Shown piece by piece: positions 41,661 through 56,784 of a stretch of 64,000 bases of DNA; the first letter of the stretch is position 1; every line of letters starts with the position of its first letter. The DNA is from Octopus sinensis. Its lineage: Eukaryota. The DNA lies in NCBI RefSeq assembly GCF_006345805.1, contig NC_043000.1, forward strand, positions 86,986,001 to 87,050,000, given 5' to 3'. The position numbers and the translations under genes were made by a program. The notes under the pieces are model-generated. The model made no database searches. It was not told the DNA's origin and was given only the letters and a program-made list of their open reading frames with translations.

Positions 41661-42313
41661 GATAGGTTGTAAGGGATATATTGCAAATAGCGTTATACTA
41701 GTTTTTAGCTCGAATAAATAAGTTAAATTAAATTGAATAGACCATTGGTTACATTTGGAGGGAGTGAAGAGTAGTCATATTTTTAAACAAAGTAAAATAT
41801 ACTAATACAATGACATCTCCTATGGAAAGGAATAAAAATATTTTTAAAATGTGAAAGCTGTGTAGGACTTGAAACCTTTTCTCATCGATACCTTGGTGAA
41901 ATTACACAGTGTAACAAAATTTTAATTTTTCTTGTCTTTGGTCAGTAAGTGTTATTTCCTATTTACTTCTGTTTAGAAATTAAAGGAAATGACGTATTAT
42001 TTCTTTCAAACTTTGCTTTTGTGACCTGGACATCAATATTTTGAAACTGACCTACTTTGCATTACATTTCACACAGATTCAGTACTGAGTTGCTGAAGCA
42101 GAATTATCGTTGTAGCTAATATTCTGCTCAATACCACTGATTTGCTTGTCAATTGCTTGACCTTAACCATGTATATCCTTTACAGTATCTTCTTTATTTA
42201 TTACTATCTTTACATCTGCTGAAAAGATAGAGAAAAAGATGGTGATGAGGTGTTAGGAAGTACCCTCAAAGTACAAGGATAGAGTAAATATGTGTGTATA
42301 ATTATATGTGTGC

Positions 42314-42735
42314 GTTTGGGTTTGTGCCAGGGAGAAGTACCACTGATGCTATATTTCTGGTAAGACAGCTGCAGGAGAAATTCCTAGCCAAAGATAAATC
42401 TTTGTACTTGGCTTTCATTGACATGGAGAAAGCCTTTGACAGGGTTCCCCGATCCCTTATCTGGTGGTTAATGCAGAAAGTAGGGACAGATGAGTGGTTA
42501 GTAAGAGCCGTACAAGCCATGTACAAGGACACTGATAGTAAGGTGAGGATTGGCAATGATTATAGTGAAGAATTCCGGGTAGATGTAGGGGCTCACCAAG
42601 GATCAGTCCTCAGCCCTCTCTTATTCATCATAGTCCTCCAGGCAATAACAGAGGAATTCAAGACAGGCTGCCCCTAAAAGCTCTTCTATGCTAATGACCT
42701 TGCTCTAATAGCTGAGTCACTACCAGAACTAAAGT
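42314..42735 (+). mobile_element. RTE LINE reverse transcriptase fragment
   Basis: FGFVPGRSTTDAIF, LAFIDMEKAFDRVPR, HQGSVLSPLLF; YADD has decayed to YAND. Confidence 0.92.
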
Positions 42736-43150: not shown

Positions 43151-44535
43151 TTAAATGTCAAAGGGTTATTCTTTTAATCCCTGAATGAATGAAAACAACA
43201 AAGCAGTGTTAGCATCTGCCAGGCTGTCTAGTGAGTAGAAAACCTATCATCATCACAGACGCTTAATGTCCACTTTATCATATTCATTGCATTGGTCAGA
43301 TGGAGTTTGTTGAGGTAGATATCCTTCAGCCAGGGAGCCAGTGAGATGTCCTTCTTGTTGCCAAACCTTTGTTGCATTTTCCAAGCAAGGTAATATTTCC
43401 CCATGGCCAGAGATGTTTTTTTCATGGAAGACTGGAAATGAACAACCACATTTGTATGATGATACTCATTTAGAGTCATCACATGATGTCAATACAGGGA
43501 TACACACATACACCTACCACCACCATCACCACCGCACATATATAGGAGGGACTTTTTCACTTTCTGTCTACAAAATCCACTTACAGGACTTTGGTTGACC
43601 TAAGGCTGTAGTAGAAGACACTTGCCTGCCTGCCTGTATGCATATATATATGTATGTATCTACATTTATCTGTCTATGAATAAATATAGGTATGTACGCA
43701 CATATATATATGCATAAATATATATGTATGCATGCACATGCATATATATATATGCATGTATGTATATGTAGGAAGTCAACGATGAAAGGCTTGAGTGTCA
43801 GGTTGAGAAATTTTAAAATACAATCTTTTAGAAATAATGCAACTCACCATTTATTTTATTTATATTTCAGACCATCCCACCTTCCTAAAAAAATTTTATT
43901 AACTAATTAAGATGAGATAACAGTTAAGAAATGTTACTGAATGAAATGGCTATTGTATTTAACTTTACAGTTTATCTTAATGTAAAATATTTGTAAAATA
44001 TATACTAAGTTTTATGATTCAACATACAGACTCTGTGTGTGCATATATATATAAGTGCAAACAAGCTCATACTGAAAAAGCAGTCAAAAACATGGACAAG
44101 AAAATTTAAAAAAGAATATCTTCAATGAAAGCTTATTATATAAACCTCCAACCTTTTCTTTTTATTATGAAGTTTAGATACAAGCAAAGAAATTCAATAT
44201 ATTAACAAAAAAAAAACAAAATAAAAAAAGCAGACCAACAAAACATTATAGAATCTCAATAACTCTTTTTGACAATCATTATGAAATTGTATACTGTTAT
44301 TTTCTTCAAAATTAAAAAAATAAAATGTTTAAATTGTATTCTTTTTGTCAGAAAACAGCCAAATTGTCTTGAAGACTGTACCAAAGACACACTTGGTGTA
44401 TCACAAAAATCTAATATGCCTTGTACAAGATAAAATTACTTACTTTACACTTGACTAAACTAGTTTTAGTTGTTTTCTTTTTTATGAAATTAATTCACTA
44501 CATGTTTTATTTTGTTCTTGTGCGATATATATATA

Positions 44536-44866
44536 GGGAAATCCCCCATCCCATCAGGAATCACTGCTGCATTGCTTAAAATATATGGTGGTGTAGGTTA
44601 TGGTCTAGTCACCCGTATTGTAAATCAGCTGGTTCACAAAGGAGTCATTCCCAATGATTGGTATAGCAGCACTATAATCACCTGCTACAAAGGTAAATGT
44701 GCTGCCTTAGACAGAAATAATTACAGAGGTATCAAATTGTTGGATCAGGTGATGAAAGTTACAGAGAGAGTCATAGCCCAACTAATTAGGGAGAGAGTTA
44801 GCTTAGACGAGATGCAGTTTAGTTTTGTGCCAGGGAGAAGCACCACTGATGCTATATTTCTGGTAA
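44536..44866 (+). mobile_element. Internal RTE RT fragment flanked by direct repeats of about 165-175 bp
   Basis: YKGK...RNNYRGIKLL...MQFSFVPGRSTTDAIF; the flanks 44361-44535 and 44865-45026 are near-identical. Confidence 0.88.
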
Positions 44867-45051
44867 ATTGTCTCAAAGACACTTGGTGTATCACAAAAAT
44901 CTAATATGCCTTGTACAAGATAAAGTTACTTACTTTACACATGACTAAACTAGTTTTAGCTTTTCTTTTCTTTTCTTTTTTATGAAATTAATTCACTACC
45001 TGTTTTGTTTTTGTGCAATATATATACATACATATATATATATATATATCA

Positions 45052-46445
45052 ATAATAAAAGGGTAAAATCAATTAATTATTAATTAATTTCACCAAGTAG
45101 TGTTCAGTATGTAAAAGGACCATTCAAGGTATATTCAAAATATTACGTTATATAATTAGGGCTCAGTAAAATAATTTACTTTACCACATACTGAAACTTT
45201 TAGAAATAGCAGCCAAAAAGTTTTTTTAGCCATTTCTTCTACTATAAGAAAAGTCTCCCAGATAGTGTTTACTCAAAAATAATTCCCGTAGATATGGAGG
45301 GAAAAACAAAATATAACATGTACAAAGATCATTTGAGAACGTTAATGTTTCTAGATTGTCGAATTAAAATTCGACATTTCTTTCGTCAGCTCAACATTTC
45401 TTAATTTGGATTTGAAAGCACTAAAAATTGAACATACCCGTCTGATATGAGTAACCTCAGACAAATCATCTCCAAACTGCCAGTGCCAGCAAATTCAAAA
45501 CGTATGAGTGAAGATTCGTATTCTTCCTGCTTCCATCCACGTGAGTTATAGAGTAAACAGATTATTACGGTGAGAACCGCAGTAAAGAACAGGGAGAAAG
45601 GAATTGTATTATCAATAATAAAAGGGTAAAATCAATTAATTATTAATTAATTTCACCAAGTAGTGTTCAGTATGTAAAAGCGCCATCCAACCAAAATGCA
45701 AATATATGGGAAACTACCACCTGTGTCATCTCTTGTGAAAAGTAGGAGAGTCCAGTTTGCTGGACATTGTTGTAGAGCTGAAAAAGAAGTAATTTCTACT
45801 CTTCTCCTCTGGAAGCCATCTACTCGCAGTACCAGAGGGCGCACACTCTCCTACCCTGATGTAATCTCCAGGGATACAGGCATCCAGCAACAGGACCTCC
45901 GTAATGCCATGATGGACCGTGAAGTCTGGCGTAGCATGGTAAATTCCATTGTCTCGACCACGGTCGAACAATGACGATGATGATGTATATTCAAAATATT
46001 ATGTTATATAATTAGGGCTCAGTAAAATAATTTACTTTACCACATACTGAAACTTTTAGAAATAGCAGCCAATCTTCACTCGTACTTTTTGAATTTGCTG
46101 GCACTGGCAGTTTGGAGATGATTTGTCTGAGGTTACTCATATCAGACGGGTATGTTCAATTTTTAGTGCTTTCAAATCCAAATTAAGAAATGTTGAGCTG
46201 ACCAAAGAAATGTTGAGTTTTAATTCGACTAATCTAGAAATGTTAACGTTCTCAAATGATCTTTGTACATGTGATATTTTGTTTTTCCCTCCATATCTAC
46301 GGGAATTATTTTTGAGTAAACACTATCTGGGAGACTTTTCTTATAGTAGAAGAAATGGCTAAAAAACTTTTTGGCTGCTATTTCTAAAAGTTTCAGTATG
46401 TGGTAAAGTAAATTATTTTACTGAGCCCTAATTATATAATATAAT
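45052..46445. mobile_element. Penelope-like element end with a tandem partial repeat and an inverted copy, interrupted by an RTE 3' end (45681-45985)
   Basis: ataataaaagggtaaaatcaatt occurs at about 45052 and 45615; 46072-46440 is the reverse complement of about 45145-45515; hammerhead motif at 45333-45394. Confidence 0.75.
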
Positions 46446-51545: not shown

Positions 51546-52393
51546 ACTATACCAGCGGAGTCGTCTACCAGCGCAAAATGAAGGAAATCATATTGAAGAT
51601 ATTATTTGTTAATATTCCAATTGAATAAAATGTTGAAGATTTTGCATTTATTTCTTGAAAATATACATTTTGCCTATGTGTCCAGACTTTAGGCACATCC
51701 TGTATAATATCTTCATTACTTCTTCCAATTTCAAGGTGGTGAATTGGCAAAATCGTTAATGCCTGGTGGTATTTGAGTATCTTTACATTTTGAATTCAAA
51801 TTTCGCCAAACTCAACTCTACCTTTCATCCTTTTGGGGTCAATAAAATAAAGTACCATTCAAATACTAAGAGTCAATGTAATCGAACAACTTCCCTCCTC
51901 CTAAAATTGCTGGCCATGGACCAACATTTGAAACAAGTGTTATAATATATAGTCAAATCAAAAGGACCAATGAAAATAACAACATGCAATAAAAAGTGGC
52001 AATAAGAATGATGTAGCCCAGTGCTAGTTGTCCAACCCGTGCTAGCACGGAAAACGGACGTTAAACAATGATGATGAGAAAAAGATGGGATGGCCATTAC
52101 TGCAACGTCATAGATCAGTTAGGGCTGTCCTACGGTTAAACAACAAAACATGCTTAATAGTTTCCAACAATTTAAGTGGTACCTCGGTAGCTCGTTAGGC
52201 CAATAATAAACACTAGTTTTATTTCAGTTCTTTATCATTCGACAATTGGTTTACTATTTAACTATGAATGCTCGATTAATTATTTGGCTAGTCAAACAAT
52301 CTCAGAGCCGAAGATGACCTACAGTAGAGAGAGAGAGCATGTCATTGAAGAGGTCGCATAATTGGAGAGAAAAGGACTTCGACAAACATAACT

Positions 52394-53871
52394 GGGTACT
52401 TGTCTATTGTCGTGGTCCCGGTTTCGCACGCGCCAGACGTAGGTATTCGATACTCGAGATCCTACGAGGTGACTTGCGCATGCGCAGTGCAGAATTCGCG
52501 CATGCGCGTTACCACCCCCTAAAAAAAAAGGTGTTGGATTTCACTAAAAATATATATGTGTGTGTGTGTGTGTGTATATATAACATTTTCAATTTTACAC
52601 AAAAAAATTACATAGTTGCTTTCCTCGCGGATTTACAGATAAATGAATTAATTACTATTTTACAGAATAAAATTAATGAATTAATTATATAAATTAAATA
52701 ATTCTTGAAAATTAATTAATATTAATAATATTTTTTGAACAAAGTAAATAATTTATAAAACTTGGTTAATAATTTTTTTTACACAAACGCGAACGTATAT
52801 AATTTGTGAAACTTTTTTTTTTTTTACAGACGTATATAATTTGGTAAACTTAATGAATTAATTTCTTCTCATCATCATCATCGTTTAACGTCCGTTCTCC
52901 ATGCCAGCATGGGTTGGACGGTTCGACCGGGGATCTGGGAAGCCAGAAGGCTGCACCAGACTCCAGTCTTATCTGGCAATGTTTCTACAGCTGGATGCCC
53001 TTCCTAACGCCAACCACTCCGAGAGTGTAGTGGGTGCTTTTTACATGCCACCCGCACAGGTGCCAGGAGAGGCTGGCAACGGCCACGGTCGGATTGGTGC
53101 CAGTCGAGGCGGCTCTGGCATCGGCCACGATTCGGATAGTGCTTTTTACGTACCACCAGTCCAGGGGTCCTGGCATTTGCCGGGTACCACACTTGCCCCA
53201 ACATGTCTTCGCAAGCAAAGGGGGTTGGCGTGGGTGCCTGTCGTGGGATGAGGTTCGATATCAACTTCGCTTGCCTCAACAGGTCTTTGTGTATAAATGT
53301 ATAAATTTTTCGCACTAAATTCTTTCCGTAGAATTTATCAAAAAACGCGCAAAATTATTCCGTAGAATTTATCAAATTAAAAAACGCAAAATTAATATAT
53401 TTTTTGAAATTGCAAATTATTTAGAATATAAAACAAATGAAGTTAAATTTTAAAAATAAATGTCATATACTTATACTCTGTAAGGTGCTGTGTTCACACT
53501 TCAATTTACTATTTTCTAGAAATGTTGCTTTTCTAATTGAAACAATTTTTCTCAATCTCCATTTAAAAGTCCATAATGCCTCTTGAACCATATCAAAATG
53601 AACAACTTTGAATTACGCGGCGGCGGTGGTGGTGGTGTGAGGTTCTAATTTTTTTTCTGATCTCTCTTTGCCCCCTCTTTATCTCAGTTGTTCATTCCGC
53701 TAATATTTAGAAAAATTTTCGCGCCCAATTTTTGTTGTCGCGGGAAAAGATGAACGATTTAAAATAAATATATCTTAATTGTAGTGTGAGAAAGTATATA
53801 TATTCTGATGACAAAATATATTATCTTTCAAAAACATCCCAAATTTATAGACTATATCGTGTAGGTTTAAG

Positions 53872-53916
<45 letters not shown>

Positions 53917-55268
53917 AGAATGAAACATCTTTCATCTGTCTCCCCACCACACCTCCATCTAGGGGGGCAAAGAGAGATCAGAAAAAAAATTAGAACCTCA
54001 CACCACCACCACCACCGCCGCCGCCGCGTAATTCAAAGTTGTTCATTTTGATATGGCTCAAGAGGCATTATGGACTTTTAAATGGAGATTGAGAGAAAAA
54101 TTGTTTCAATTAGAAAAGCAACATTTCTAGAAAATAGTAAATTGAAGTGTGAACACAGCACCTTACAGAGTATAAGTATATGACATTTATTTTTAAAATT
54201 TAACTTCATTTGTTTTATATTCTAAATAATTTGCAATTTCAAAAAATATATTAATTTTGCGTTTTTTAATTTGATAAATTCTACGGAATAATTTTGCGCG
54301 TTTTTTGATAAATTCTACGGAAAGAATTTAGTGCGAAAAATTTATACATTTATACACAAAGACCTGTTGAGGCAAGCGAAGTTGATATCAAACCTCATCC
54401 CACGACAGGCACCCACGCCAACCCCCTTTGCTTGCGAAGACATGTTGGGGCAAGTGTGGCACCCGGCAAATGCCAGGACCCCTGGACTGGTGGTACGTAA
54501 AAAGCACTATCCGAATCGTGGCCGATGCCAGAGCCGCCTCGACTGGCACCAATCCGACCGTGGCCGTTGCCAGCCTCTCCTGGCACCTGTGCGGGTGGCA
54601 TGTAAAAAGCACCCACTACACTCTCGGAGTGGTTGGCGTTAGGAAGGGCATCCAGCTGTAGAAACATTGCCAGATAAGACTGGAGTCTGGTGCAGCCTTC
54701 TGGCTTCCCAGATCCCCGGTCGAACCGTCCAACCCATGCTGGCATGGAGAACGGACGTTAAACGATGATGATGATGAGAAGAAATTAATTCATTAAGTTT
54801 ACCAAATTATATACGTCTGTAAAAAAAAAAAAAAGTTTCACAAATTATATACGTTCGCGTTTGTGTAAAAAAATTATTAACCAAGTTTTATAAATTATTT
54901 ACTTTGTTCAAAAAATATTATTAATATTAATTAATTTTCAAGAATTATTTAATTTATATAATTAATTCATTAATTTTATTCTGTAAAATAGTAATTAATT
55001 CATTTATCTGTAAATCCGCGAGGAAAGCGACTATGTAATTTTTTTGTGTAAAATTGAAAATGTTATATATACACACACACACACACACACATATATATTT
55101 TTAGTGAAATCCAACACCTTTTTTTTTAGGGGGTGGTAACGCGCATGCGCGAATTCTGCACTGCGCATGCGCAAGTCACCTCGTAGGATCTCGAGTATCG
55201 AGTACCTACGTCTGGCGCGCGCGAATTCGCGTGTGAGAAACCGGGACCACGACAATAGACAAGTACCC
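52394..55268. mobile_element. 2,875-bp non-autonomous foldback DNA element; arms about 1.3 kb, 284-bp spacer, 6-bp TSD ATAACT
   Basis: ATAACT|GGGTACTTGTC...GACAAGTACCC|ATAACT; arms 52394-53676 and 53961-55268 are near-perfect reverse complements. Confidence 0.92.
52870..53290 (-). mobile_element. RTE-tail retroposon in the left arm, mirrored at about 54352-54778
   Basis: (cat)n cgtttaacgtccg...; mirrored ORFs 52901-53251 and 54395-54745 differ by one residue. Confidence 0.9.
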
Positions 55269-55807
55269 ATAACTGAATGATTTTAAAAAGTAAATCAATT
55301 GATGAATAATAAAAAATCAAAAAAGAACCAGCGCGTGTTTTTATTATAGGTAAAATGACCGCTCTCCCTGAAAATACAAAATTTGTTTCAATACACGAGT
55401 TCACATTCAGAATCTTGCAAATCAAATAATAACGATAAAAAAAAACGTTCAGGGGAAATAACGTCTGTTTTATGACAACAGTAAATAAATCAATACAGTG
55501 TTGCCTCCCCTGGTTTCATACCGGTCGGTAATCTGAAATGTAACTTGAAATCTTTACACCGGTATGTAGATATCTGAAAGGAAAAAAATCATTGATACAT
55601 CTCCGTTACCTTCAAATACTTGAGATCTTGATATACTTAATAACCATAATAATTTAATGAAAATAAAAGTAAAAACACAAAATATCAAATGGCATTTCTT
55701 TTTATATAAAATATTTCCACTGTTACTAACTTATATAATCGTAAAAAGAAGAAAACAAAAGAACAGTGACTATCAAAGAGTTCATGACATAGACAAATAA
55801 AGTTTTC

Positions 55808-55975
55808 TCAGAGGTCATACTGACTCTTAGAACGTTTTTGGTAGAGCAAACGAGCTTCTTTCTCGATAGTACGGTGTTTAGCCTTGGAATATACATCATA
55901 CATGACGTAAAAAAAGCCAGCAGATACAACAACTATTGACGTATAACCAAAAATCTTTAACTTCGGCGGAGCCAT
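55808..55975 (-). CDS. Unassigned 55-aa single-pass membrane microprotein (MAPPKLKIFGYTSIVVVSAGFFYVMYDVYSKAKHRTIEKEARLLYQKRSKSQYDL)
   Basis: Hand-translated ATG-to-TGA ORF in non-repetitive DNA; hydrophobic segment at residues 8-26 and a basic/charged tail; candidate acceptor ttttaaattttag 16 nt upstream; ATTAAA at 55653-55658. Confidence 0.6.
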   Translation of the reverse strand: MAPPKLKIFGYTSIVVVSAGFFYVMYDVYSKAKHRTIEKEARLLYQKRSKSQYDL

Positions 55976-56086
55976 TGGTGAGACTTGAATACTAAAATTT
56001 AAAAACGTGAGGCATTCAAGACTAAAATATCAATAAGTTCTGGAATAACCTTGAGGTGGGGTTAAGTTTAATCCGTGTAGCTGCTT

Positions 56087-56260
56087 CTACTCCGATTCTG
56101 ATTTTGATTCCTCAGTATTAGTGCACGCCTGCTTCTTCAATACTTCTTCATTGTATTTTTCAAAATTTGGTTTCCAAATATATATTCCACCAAGCACGCC
56201 GATTACGGTTGCAACAATTATTTGGTCCCAGCTCAGTCGACGACGAGGAAGAATTCGCAT
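56087..56260 (-). CDS. PIGBOS1: PIGBOS1-like microprotein, 57 aa (MRILPRRRLSWDQIIVATVIGVLGGIYIWKPNFEKYNEEVLKKQACTNTEESKSESE)
   Basis: RRLSWDQIIVATVIGVLGGIYIWKPNFEKY aligns ungapped with human [30 protein letters not shown] (16/30 identical; human sequence recalled from memory). Preceded by a GTAAGT...TTTCAG intron. Confidence 0.88.
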   Translation of the reverse strand: MRILPRRRLSWDQIIVATVIGVLGGIYIWKPNFEKYNEEVLKKQACTNTEESKSESE

Positions 56261-56271
56261 AGTTGACGAAT

Positions 56272-56372
56272 CTGAAAGCGAACTGTAGTTATCTCCCTTG
56301 ATATAACATCTTTTGCATTTAAAATATTTACCAGTTACTTCACTGTTACGAAGCGTCTCTATAGAAACTTAC
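56272..56372 (-). other. 101-bp 5'-UTR intron of the PIGBOS1-like gene
   Basis: Minus strand ttcg|GTAAGTtt...cgctttCAG|attcgtcaactATG. Confidence 0.75.
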
Positions 56373-56470
56373 CGAATAACTGCTGTTTGTTTAGAACAAG
56401 CGGTCAAAACAGCGATATAGATGATGAGAGGGGAACCCGCGATCTTTTTGGTTTTTAAGATCGGCTTTCT
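56373..56470 (-). promoter_or_regulatory. Putative non-coding exon 1 / promoter-proximal region
   Basis: CpG-retaining unique sequence directly upstream of the splice donor; the transcription start is not determinable. Confidence 0.45.
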
Positions 56471-56784
56471 GGAAGAAGTTTGGATTTATAAATAAAAAAT
56501 TATTTTTGTTGATTACACCCCCTCCATACGCACACACACATACATTAGTATACCCGTGTCAAAAAAATGATGCTATTTTAAAACAAATTAACTGAAACTA
56601 GTATTTAAAAATGCATCGACATCAAAGTACATTCTTTATATCTTATATAGTTTTGTTACAATCCGTCATATATTGCTAGGTTAAGTAATGATCTTGTTCA
56701 TTTACCTTATTATTATGAATGTATTATATTCACTCCATAGTCACTGTAGCATGCAATCCATACACATAAATATCATGTCATGTC

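What the first reader, a model, noticed from the sequence alone, without database searches (positions are those of the whole stretch)
55808..55975. Unassigned 55-aa single-pass microprotein next to PIGBOS1
Seen: an intact ORF (MAPPKLKIFGYTSIVVVSAGFFYVMYDVYSKAKHRTIEKEARLLYQKRSKSQYDL) in unique, non-repeat DNA with +4 G at the start codon. I cannot place it in a family. There is only a faint resemblance to small mitochondrial inner-membrane assembly factors (COX14, PET100 or SMIM types), too weak to call. Inference: a novel or highly diverged mitochondrial microprotein.
Basis: partly seen in the sequence, partly recalled or inferred. Interest (0 to 1): 0.75.

Follow-up and report, generated by a model that had tools for sequence, protein, structure and literature searches.

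The report
Conserved small ORF downstream of PIGBOS1
A 55-codon open reading frame lies 111 bases behind a genuine PIGBOS1-like microprotein gene and stays open in one related species, but its changes look close to neutral, so it is unproven whether it makes a protein.

Summary
The ORF is real: 55808..55975 on the minus strand, 55 aa, in unique DNA. It lies 111 nt downstream of a true PIGBOS1-like ORF (56087..56260, Pfam PF23670, E 6.9e-14) on the same strand.

In the window alone it is not unusual. ATG ORFs of 55 aa or more occur about 1.1 times per kb per strand.

It has no detectable relative in Pfam, PDB sequences, a 5.8-billion word-indexed protein set, or 1.84 billion representatives searched exhaustively. 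It is not a detectable paralogue of PIGBOS1.

One orthologous locus was recovered: four Logan contigs from a related species, about 82% identical in non-coding DNA. There the ORF is intact with the same start, stop and length and no indels (73% aa identity). Neutral simulation gives this 0.7-13%, depending on the criterion.

The substitutions carry no coding signature. Codon-position differences are 8/7/9, pN/pS is 0.55 (p=0.17), and nucleotide identity equals the flanks. PIGBOS1 next door gives 9/0/10 and 0.24 (p=0.0016).

Verdict: coding status is unresolved. I put about 45% on a non-functional 3'-flank ORF, about 35% on a real second-cistron membrane microprotein, and about 12% on a regulatory downstream ORF. 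Nothing supports "mitochondrial".

The parts
55808..55975 (-). ORF2, the finding: a 55-codon ATG..TGA ORF. It has a predicted N-terminal hydrophobic helix (residues 8-26) and a net-basic C-terminal tail.
   Evidence: Searches give the sequence. One search gives Kyte-Doolittle 19-mer 1.63 and tail net charge +4. (AF2, single sequence) gives one helix at residues 4-51, pLDDT 76. Searches show an intact orthologue of identical length at L001 765..932.
56087..56260 (-). ORF1: a PIGBOS1-like microprotein gene (57 aa), clearly under purifying selection.
   Evidence: Pfam PF23670, E 6.9e-14; homologue P0001, 84% identical; pN/pS 0.24, codon-position differences 9/0/10, Fisher p=0.0016, BLOSUM simulation p<1e-4.
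55976..56086 (-). 111-nt spacer between the ORF1 stop and the ORF2 start (100 nt in the related species).
   Evidence: 84% identity with 2 indel events. ORF1 and ORF2 are in the same frame in the window (285 nt apart) but not in L001 (274 nt apart), so read-through or fusion is excluded.
55992..56015 (-). Conserved 7-codon mini-ORF (ATG..TAG) in the spacer, ending 16 nt before the ORF2 ATG. Its TAG lies in a conserved T-rich ...ATTTTAG that could also be read as a 3' splice-acceptor-like motif (inference only).
   Evidence: ATG at 56015 in the window and at 725 in L001, 7 codons in both; this is the best-conserved part of the spacer (93% identity over 56033-55994).
55706..56036 (-). Longest indel-free stretch of the window/L001 alignment (331 nt). 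It contains ORF2 plus 61 nt upstream and 102 nt downstream.
   Evidence: 84.0% identity. The next longest runs are 209 nt (containing ORF1) and 165 nt.
55701..55706 (-). Candidate poly(A)-signal variant: TATAAA in the window, GATAAA at the aligned place in L001. A conserved T/GT-rich block follows. Inference only.
   Evidence: Read directly. The conserved block 55695-55657 is 97% identical. No RNA evidence is available.

Best explanation
ORF2 is most likely a non-functional open frame in the 3' flank, probably the 3' UTR, of the PIGBOS1-like gene. On this reading it arose by chance in a somewhat GC-richer, stop-poor stretch. It has stayed open in two fairly close species because divergence is limited (about 14% in the ORF) and because this part of the transcription unit tolerates few indels for reasons unrelated to the reading frame. 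Any translation would be incidental, and the peptide sequence is not what selection sees. Shown: the ORF, its position, its retention in one relative, and its neutral-looking substitution pattern. Inferred: that it lies in the PIGBOS1 3' UTR, and that it is not translated to any functional effect.
For: (1) ORFs of this size are common here: 87 ATG ORFs of 55 aa or more in 38 kb. (2) The 24 nucleotide differences from the orthologue fall 8/7/9 on codon positions 1/2/3, against 9/0/10 for ORF1. (3) NG86 gives sd 7.5 / S 35 and nd 16.5 / N 130, omega 0.55, Fisher p=0.17, against omega 0.24 and p=0.0016 for ORF1. (4) Other frames of the same DNA give similar pN/pS, 0.55-0.85. (5) Given an intact ORF, the amino-acid changes are no more conservative than random ones: BLOSUM sum 203 against a simulated 194+/-13, p=0.24, while ORF1 gives p<1e-4. 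(6) Nucleotide identity of ORF2 (85.7%) equals that of the spacer (84.0%) and the next 200 nt (84.1%). (7) Conservation peaks cross the ORF borders, and the last 16 codons have 0 synonymous and 2 non-synonymous changes. That points to constraint at the nucleotide level, not the protein level. (8) The indel-free run extends 61 nt before the start and 102 nt past the stop. (9) No relative was found in Pfam, PDB, or the 5.8-billion and 1.84-billion protein sets. (10) ORF2 lies behind a 57-codon ORF whose start has A at -3, and its own start has C at -3 in the window. Scanning ribosomes should therefore reach it poorly (established scanning model).
Against: (1) Retention is better than the neutral model predicts. 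Using substitution and indel rates from the flanking non-coding alignment, an ORF of 50-65 codons from the same ATG survives in 4.7% of simulations (13% without indels). An ORF of exactly 55 codons survives in 0.7% (9.4% without indels). (2) The hydrophobic helix plus basic tail is kept despite 15 replacements, which happens in only 23% of retained simulated ORFs. (3) In both species GC content is 0.39-0.40 in ORF2, as in ORF1 (0.40-0.41), and falls to 0.24/0.20 right after the stop. (4) The only polymorphism inside ORF2 among the four Logan contigs is a synonymous third-position A/G. (5) Only 2-3 AUGs lie between the two start codons. (6) In the related species the ORF2 start has G at -3 and G at +4.
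Confidence: 0.45

Rival explanations
1. ORF2 is a real, lineage-restricted second cistron. The PIGBOS1-like transcript would be dicistronic. After translating the short ORF1, or after skipping its AUG, ribosomes would start again at ORF2. Alternatively, an isoform spliced to the conserved ...ATTTTAG 16 nt upstream would make ORF2 the first ORF. The product would be a fast-evolving single-pass membrane microprotein with an N-terminal anchor and a basic C-terminal tail on the cytosolic or matrix side. It could act with PIGBOS1 at the mitochondrial outer membrane or ER. A minor variant reads the hydrophobic stretch as a signal peptide, with the conserved QKR as a processing site.
For: The start, stop and length are identical, with zero indels, across about 18% non-coding divergence. 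The neutral expectation is 0.7-4.7% with indels. The helix and basic tail are retained. All nine replacements in residues 8-28 keep an uncharged residue (seven hydrophobic-for-hydrophobic, plus G20C and Y26F) (sequences). GC matches ORF1 and drops after the stop. The one SNP is synonymous. The interval between the starts is AUG-poor and holds a conserved 7-codon mini-ORF. pN/pS is 0.55, below 1 although not significantly. There is precedent: dicistronic smORF genes that encode pairs of single-pass mitochondrial peptides, Sloth1/Sloth2 in Drosophila, translated by leaky scanning (PMC9681215).
Against: There is no codon-level signature of selection. Conservation does not respect the ORF borders. 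The last 16 codons have no synonymous change. No homologue exists anywhere, and there is no similarity to ORF1 (hhalign probability 0.4%). The gene calls listed for the four Logan contigs include ORF1 but not ORF2. The window's start context has C at -3. It is not shown that one mature mRNA carries both ORFs: the Logan contigs are collinear with genomic DNA and end at repeats, so they could be DNA or RNA.
Confidence: 0.35
2. ORF2 is a translated downstream ORF, or overlaps an RNA element, whose role is regulatory. On this reading the act of translating it, or the conserved nucleotide blocks in and around it, tunes the output or stability of the PIGBOS1 mRNA. The peptide sequence would be free to drift.
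For: An open frame kept while amino acids change at 70-80% of the neutral rate is the pattern expected if translation matters rather than the peptide. Nucleotide-level conserved blocks lie at the ORF2 3' end across the stop codon, and just upstream of the ATG. Translated 3'-UTR dORFs that raise main-ORF translation independently of the peptide are described in vertebrates (PMC7459409, listed and known to me from its abstract).
Against: No expression or ribosome data are available. A dORF effect would not need a 55-codon frame of fixed length. The conserved blocks carry no supported RNA structure or Rfam match.
Confidence: 0.12

Closest known systems
Sloth1/Sloth2 (human SMIM4 / C12orf73-UQCC6) bicistronic smORF gene of Drosophila
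   Same: Two smORFs of about 55-80 codons lie on one strand. Each encodes a peptide with one predicted transmembrane helix. The upstream one is a conserved mitochondrial microprotein, and the arrangement exists in invertebrates (PMC9681215).
   Different: Sloth1 and Sloth2 are 5 nt apart, recognisably paralogous (27% identity), both conserved to human, and both shown to be translated and essential. Here the spacer is 111 nt. ORF2 shows no similarity to ORF1 and has no homologue outside one related species. Neither a joint transcript nor translation is shown.
PIGBOS1 (human 54-aa outer-mitochondrial-membrane microprotein that binds CLCC1)
   Same: ORF2 has the same size and layout as PIGBOS1: a short N-terminus, one helix at about residues 7-29, and a C-terminal tail of about 25 residues (PMC6814811). 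It lies directly beside the PIGBOS1-like gene.
   Different: There is no sequence relationship: no hit to PF23670 even at E<=10 and hhalign probability 0.4%. The ORF2 tail is net basic (+4), whereas the PIGBOS1-like tail is net acidic (-2).
Downstream ORFs (dORFs) in 3' UTRs
   Same: An ORF behind the main ORF on the same strand, with weak or absent peptide-level conservation (PMC7459409).
   Different: It is not shown that ORF2 lies within the mature 3' UTR or that ribosomes occupy it.
COX14, PET100 and SMIM-type small inner-membrane assembly factors
   Same: Small size and one hydrophobic helix.
   Different: No Pfam family matched at E<=10. A profile search of PDB chains gave only E~1 matches to SecE transmembrane segments. 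The resemblance is compositional only.

Membership tests
PIGBOS1-like (Pfam PF23670) | Significant match of ORF2 to the family profile | tested here: not met
   0 families for ORF2 at E<=10, while the neighbouring ORF1 scores 52.2 bits (cut-off 27). ORF2 profile against ORF1 profile gives hhalign probability 0.4%.
COX14 / PET100 / SMIM-type mitochondrial assembly microproteins | Match to any of the Pfam models for these families | tested here: not met
   no Pfam-A hit at E<=10 (HMMER filters may drop very weak matches); no PDB chain below E 0.77.
Mitochondrial microprotein (any) | Mitochondrial localisation or a targeting signal | not testable with these tools
   The only data are a moderately hydrophobic N-terminal helix followed by basic residues. 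This fits a signal anchor of either the outer mitochondrial membrane or the ER.
Dicistronic smORF gene (Sloth1/2 type) | Two smORFs on the same strand, close together | tested here: met
   111-nt spacer in the window; 100-nt spacer in L001.
Dicistronic smORF gene (Sloth1/2 type) | One mature transcript carries both ORFs | not testable with these tools
   The Logan contigs L001-L004 span both ORFs. They are collinear with genomic DNA and end at repeats, so DNA or RNA origin cannot be told. No conserved AATAAA or ATTAAA lies in the spacer.
Dicistronic smORF gene (Sloth1/2 type) | Both ORFs under purifying selection as coding sequence | tested here: inconclusive
   ORF1: omega 0.24, p=0.0016. ORF2: frame intact (neutral expectation 0.7-13%) but omega 0.55, p=0.17, and codon-position differences 8/7/9.
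Dicistronic smORF gene (Sloth1/2 type) | Both ORFs translated | not testable with these tools
   No ribosome profiling or proteomics is available. Start contexts are listed.
Translated 3'-UTR downstream ORF (dORF) | Location in the 3' UTR of a coding mRNA, with ribosome occupancy | not testable with these tools
   The position downstream of ORF1 is shown. The transcript end and ribosome occupancy are unknown.

The most novel reading that the evidence does not exclude
In octopods the PIGBOS1 gene is dicistronic. A second, orphan cistron would encode a fast-evolving N-terminally anchored membrane microprotein, made from the same mRNA by re-initiation or leaky scanning, that works with PIGBOS1 at the mitochondrion-ER interface. 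This would be a young microprotein born in the 3' UTR of an old one.
Probability: 0.3. Interest if true: 0.5.

Novelty: new member of a known kind. Interest (0 to 1): 0.3.

Why it matters
If ORF2 is translated, it would be an example outside insects and vertebrates of a dicistronic microprotein gene. It would also be a possible case of a new membrane microprotein arising in the 3' UTR of a conserved one (PIGBOS1). That would give a handle on how microproteins are born and how short first ORFs allow re-initiation. If it is not translated, it is a useful caution. At about 15-18% neutral divergence, an intact and plausible-looking transmembrane ORF beside a real microprotein gene can survive in two species without any codon-level signal. 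ORF retention in one relative is therefore not enough to annotate a microprotein.

Tried and rejected
Searches that found nothing:
- Exact look-ups of ORF2 and ORF1 in the public assembly index: not on record.
- Word-indexed search with ORF2: no candidate.
- Exhaustive phmmer of ORF2 against 1.84 billion representatives: one hit, P0002. It is a 1455-aa repetitive protein whose score is the sum of 22 sub-threshold fragments. It has no BLASTP alignment and is spurious.
- A third word-indexed search, using ORF1+ORF2 of both species joined into one alignment to catch either half: nothing, not even P0001.
- Two metagenome-contig scans, with the joined alignment and with the ORF2 alignment: pattern matches only, none confirmed.
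- PDB profile search: only SecE transmembrane noise.
- Rfam on the whole window and, permissively, on the locus: nothing relevant.
No paper on cephalopod microproteins turned up, and a search combining PIGBOS, bicistronic and smORF surfaced no report of a dicistronic PIGBOS1.

Hypotheses rejected:
- Stop-codon read-through or an ORF1-ORF2 fusion. The two ORFs share a frame in the window (285 nt apart) but not in L001 (274 nt apart).
- ORF2 as a tandem paralogue of PIGBOS1.
- ORF2 as part of a repeat or transposon. The locus is unique in the window.
- Coding on the opposite strand. All three antisense frames have 3-5 stop-containing codons.

Other steps that led nowhere:
The single-sequence model is one long helix and says nothing about family, so no fold search was run.
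- PIGB exons were looked for in all stop-free frames of 60-75 codons or more. None were seen, only LINE/RT fragments and SINE-like repeats.

Full report
OBSERVATION. The minus strand carries an ATG at 55975 and a TGA at 55808-55810. The base after the ATG is G. The -3 base is C in the window (caccaATGg) and G in the related species (cagcaATGg). The 1.46-kb stretch 55300-56760 has no other copy in the window. Repeats flank it on both sides: a SINE-like family upstream, and a repeat-rich segment of about 2.9 kb downstream that the related species lacks.

NEIGHBOUR. On the same strand, 111 nt upstream, lies a 57-codon ORF (56087..56260). It matches the Pfam PIGBOS1-like family at E 6.9e-14, 52 bits against a cut-off of 27. 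Human PIGBOS is a 54-aa outer-mitochondrial-membrane microprotein. It has a transmembrane region at residues 7-29 and a C-terminal tail that binds the ER protein CLCC1 (PMC6814811). No PIGB exons were seen in the window. The rest is satellite, LINE/RT fragments and SINE-like repeats.

IS THE ORF MORE THAN CHANCE WITHIN THE WINDOW? No.
- Positions 26001-64000 hold 87 ATG ORFs of 55 aa or more, about 1.1 per kb per strand. One within a few hundred bases behind ORF1 is therefore unremarkable.
- The layout is rarer. The ORF has an N-terminal 19-residue hydrophobic segment (Kyte-Doolittle mean 1.63) and a tail of net charge +4. Only 2 of 54 non-repetitive ORFs of 50-80 aa share this layout, including this one.

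HOMOLOGY. All searches were negative.
- ORF2 hits no Pfam family even at E<=10. The recalled likeness to COX14, PET100 or SMIM families is therefore not supported.
- No protein in the word-indexed 5.8-billion set shares three 5-residue words with it.
- An exhaustive phmmer over 1.84 billion representatives gave one hit, which is an artefact of a repetitive protein.
- A two-species profile against all PDB chains found only E~1 matches to SecE transmembrane segments.
- ORF2 is not a detectable paralogue of ORF1: hhalign probability is 0.4%.
- The single-sequence AlphaFold model is one helix at residues 4-51 with pLDDT 76. This fits any small membrane peptide.

ORTHOLOGOUS LOCUS.
- ORF1 found one relative, P0001, 84% identical and from Logan assemblies.
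- P0001 is encoded on four contigs of 1.6-1.7 kb from runs SRR11869384, -85, -91 and -94. These contigs are 99.5-99.8% identical to each other and collinear with the window at about 79% identity.
- I could not name the species, nor tell whether the reads were DNA or RNA. The contigs end where repeats begin.
- At the aligned place each contig carries an intact 55-codon ORF: MAPLKLKFFGYTSIAVASVCFMYVMFDLYSNSKHRTFEREARLLSQKRSKSQHDL. It has the same start, the same TGA stop, 24 nucleotide differences, no indel and 15 amino-acid differences (73% identity).

TEST OF CODING CONSTRAINT. ORF1 serves as the positive control.
- ORF1: 19 differences fall 9/0/10 on codon positions, omega is 0.24 and Fisher p is 0.0016. 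Its replacements are far more conservative than random (p<1e-4).
- ORF2: 24 differences fall 8/7/9, omega is 0.55 and Fisher p is 0.17. The BLOSUM sum is 203 against a simulated 194+/-13 (p=0.24).
- The five other frames of the same DNA give pN/pS of 0.55, 0.68, 0.84, 0.85 and 2.79. The ORF2 frame does not stand out, except that it alone has no stop.
- Nucleotide identity is 85.7% in ORF2, 84.0% in the spacer, 84.1% in the next 200 nt, 80.3% upstream and 89.1% in ORF1.
- Conservation peaks lie just upstream of the ORF2 ATG, across its stop codon, and in two blocks further downstream.
- The last 16 codons have no synonymous and two non-synonymous changes (P of no synonymous change about 0.04). 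This suggests constraint on the nucleotides rather than the peptide.

TEST OF ORF RETENTION. I took substitution rates (183/1007) and indel events (18, lengths as observed) from the non-coding part of the same alignment. I then evolved ORF2 neutrally.
- The ATG survives in 50% of simulations.
- An ORF of 50-65 codons from that ATG survives in 13% without indels and 4.7% with indels.
- An ORF of exactly 55 codons survives in 9.4% without indels and 0.7% with indels.
- Adding retention of the hydrophobic helix and basic tail gives 2.9% and 1.1%.
- So the intact frame is less likely than not under neutrality, roughly p 0.01-0.1.
- Part of this signal is not specific to the ORF. ORF2 lies in the longest indel-free run of the alignment (331 nt, 56036-55706), which extends 61 nt before the start and 102 nt past the stop.

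OTHER POINTERS.
- GC content is 0.39/0.40 in ORF2 and 0.40/0.41 in ORF1. It is 0.35/0.32 in the spacer and 0.24/0.20 in the 200 nt after the ORF2 stop, in the window and L001 respectively. This is partly expected for any long open frame in AT-rich DNA.
- The one polymorphism within ORF2 among the four contigs is a synonymous third-position A/G (L001 position 878).
- Only two AUGs (window) or three (L001) lie between the two start codons. They include a conserved 7-codon mini-ORF (56015..55992) that ends 16 nt before the ORF2 ATG.
- The ORF1 start has A at -3 in both species.
- The two ORFs are 285 nt apart in the window and 274 nt apart in L001. Read-through or an in-frame fusion is therefore excluded.

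HOW IT WOULD WORK, AND HOW LIKELY. The data split two ways. The frame is kept better than neutral drift predicts, but what changes inside it looks neutral. I weigh three points:
- a low prior for any one 55-codon ORF, raised somewhat by its place behind a short, real microprotein ORF and by its membrane-peptide layout;
- a likelihood ratio of roughly 10-20 for retention;
- a ratio of about 0.5 for the substitution pattern.
On that basis I put about 45% on a non-functional open frame in the 3' flank of PIGBOS1. I put about 35% on a genuine, fast-evolving second cistron. I put about 12% on a translated or structured regulatory element whose peptide does not matter.

If ORF2 is a second cistron, the likeliest route is re-initiation after the short ORF1. 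This is feasible because ORF1 has only 57 codons and the spacer is 100-111 nt. Leaky scanning could also contribute, because the interval is AUG-poor. A second possible route is an isoform spliced to the conserved ATTTTAG just upstream. The product would be anchored by its N-terminal helix, with the basic tail on the cytosolic side. All of these steps are inferred and none is shown. Nothing tested here supports a mitochondrial location.

COMPARISON WITH KNOWN SYSTEMS.
- The closest working analogy is the Sloth1/Sloth2 dicistronic gene of Drosophila. It encodes two single-pass mitochondrial peptides translated from one mRNA by leaky scanning (PMC9681215). Those two peptides are paralogous, deeply conserved and experimentally proven. 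ORF2 is none of these.
- The other analogy is 3'-UTR downstream ORFs (PMC7459409).
- ORF2 fails the membership test for the PIGBOS1 family and for every Pfam family.

NOVELTY AND INTEREST. If real, ORF2 is a new orphan member of a known kind: a single-pass microprotein in a dicistronic smORF gene. Evidence comes from only two species, and there are no expression data. Interest is therefore modest (0.3). The comparative test across octopod genomes would settle the question quickly.

LIMITS.
- Only one related species could be reached. All three word-indexed protein searches and the single exhaustive search were used.
- The joined-alignment search returned nothing, not even P0001, and must be regarded as uninformative.
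- I did not verify the organism of either sequence.

Noticed in passing
window 55490-55593 (-); L001 about 1186-1290: A 104-nt indel-free block about 250-300 nt downstream of ORF2 is the best-conserved part of the locus, with 40-nt windows at 93-100% identity. It holds a perfect 9-bp inverted repeat, CATACCGGT...ACCGGTATG. It is unique in the window and has no Rfam match. Its fold z-score is only -1.6, and there is no covariation because the stem is invariant.
   Followed up: partly
window 52385-55316: Relative to the related species' contig, the window has about 2.9 kb of extra DNA here. L001 1490-1691 aligns to window 52384-52186. The extra DNA is made of SINE-like repeats, including an inverted pair at 52889-53354 and 54292-54757.
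   Followed up: partly
window 2777-17919: A very homogeneous satellite: 382-bp unit, 39.6 copies, 99% matches, with strong GC and AT skew.
   Followed up: no
window 19070-22524: A second tandem array: 109-bp unit, 31.8 copies, 95% matches.
   Followed up: no
window 4-1255 and 31778-32283: Long degenerate (TA)n-type microsatellites of 632 and 256 copies. The 30.6-31.7 kb and 32.8-33.9 kb segments look like a tandem duplication of about 2.2 kb, because identical ORF translations appear in both.
   Followed up: no
window 25421-27096 (+), 35282-36301 (+), 42288-42674 (+), 44494-44901 (+), 45678-45971 (+): Stop-free frames with reverse-transcriptase-like sequence (LINE fragments), judged by eye from the translations. 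They were not scanned against Pfam.
   Followed up: no
window 56642-56648 (-); L001 about 131-137: A conserved TATATAA motif about 385 nt upstream of the PIGBOS1-like ATG, inside a well-conserved stretch (56700-56560, 80-90% identity). It may be the core promoter. However, 8 upstream AUGs follow it in the window (11 in the 400 nt upstream of the ORF1 ATG in L001), so the true 5' end or an intron remains unknown.
   Followed up: partly
window 55729-55932 (-), +1 frame over ORF2: A second frame overlapping ORF2 is also open for about 48 codons in both species. The ATG-started ORFs are 57 aa in the window and 39 aa in L001, with different ends. This shows that partial retention of an open frame in this DNA can occur without being the selected frame.
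   Followed up: partly
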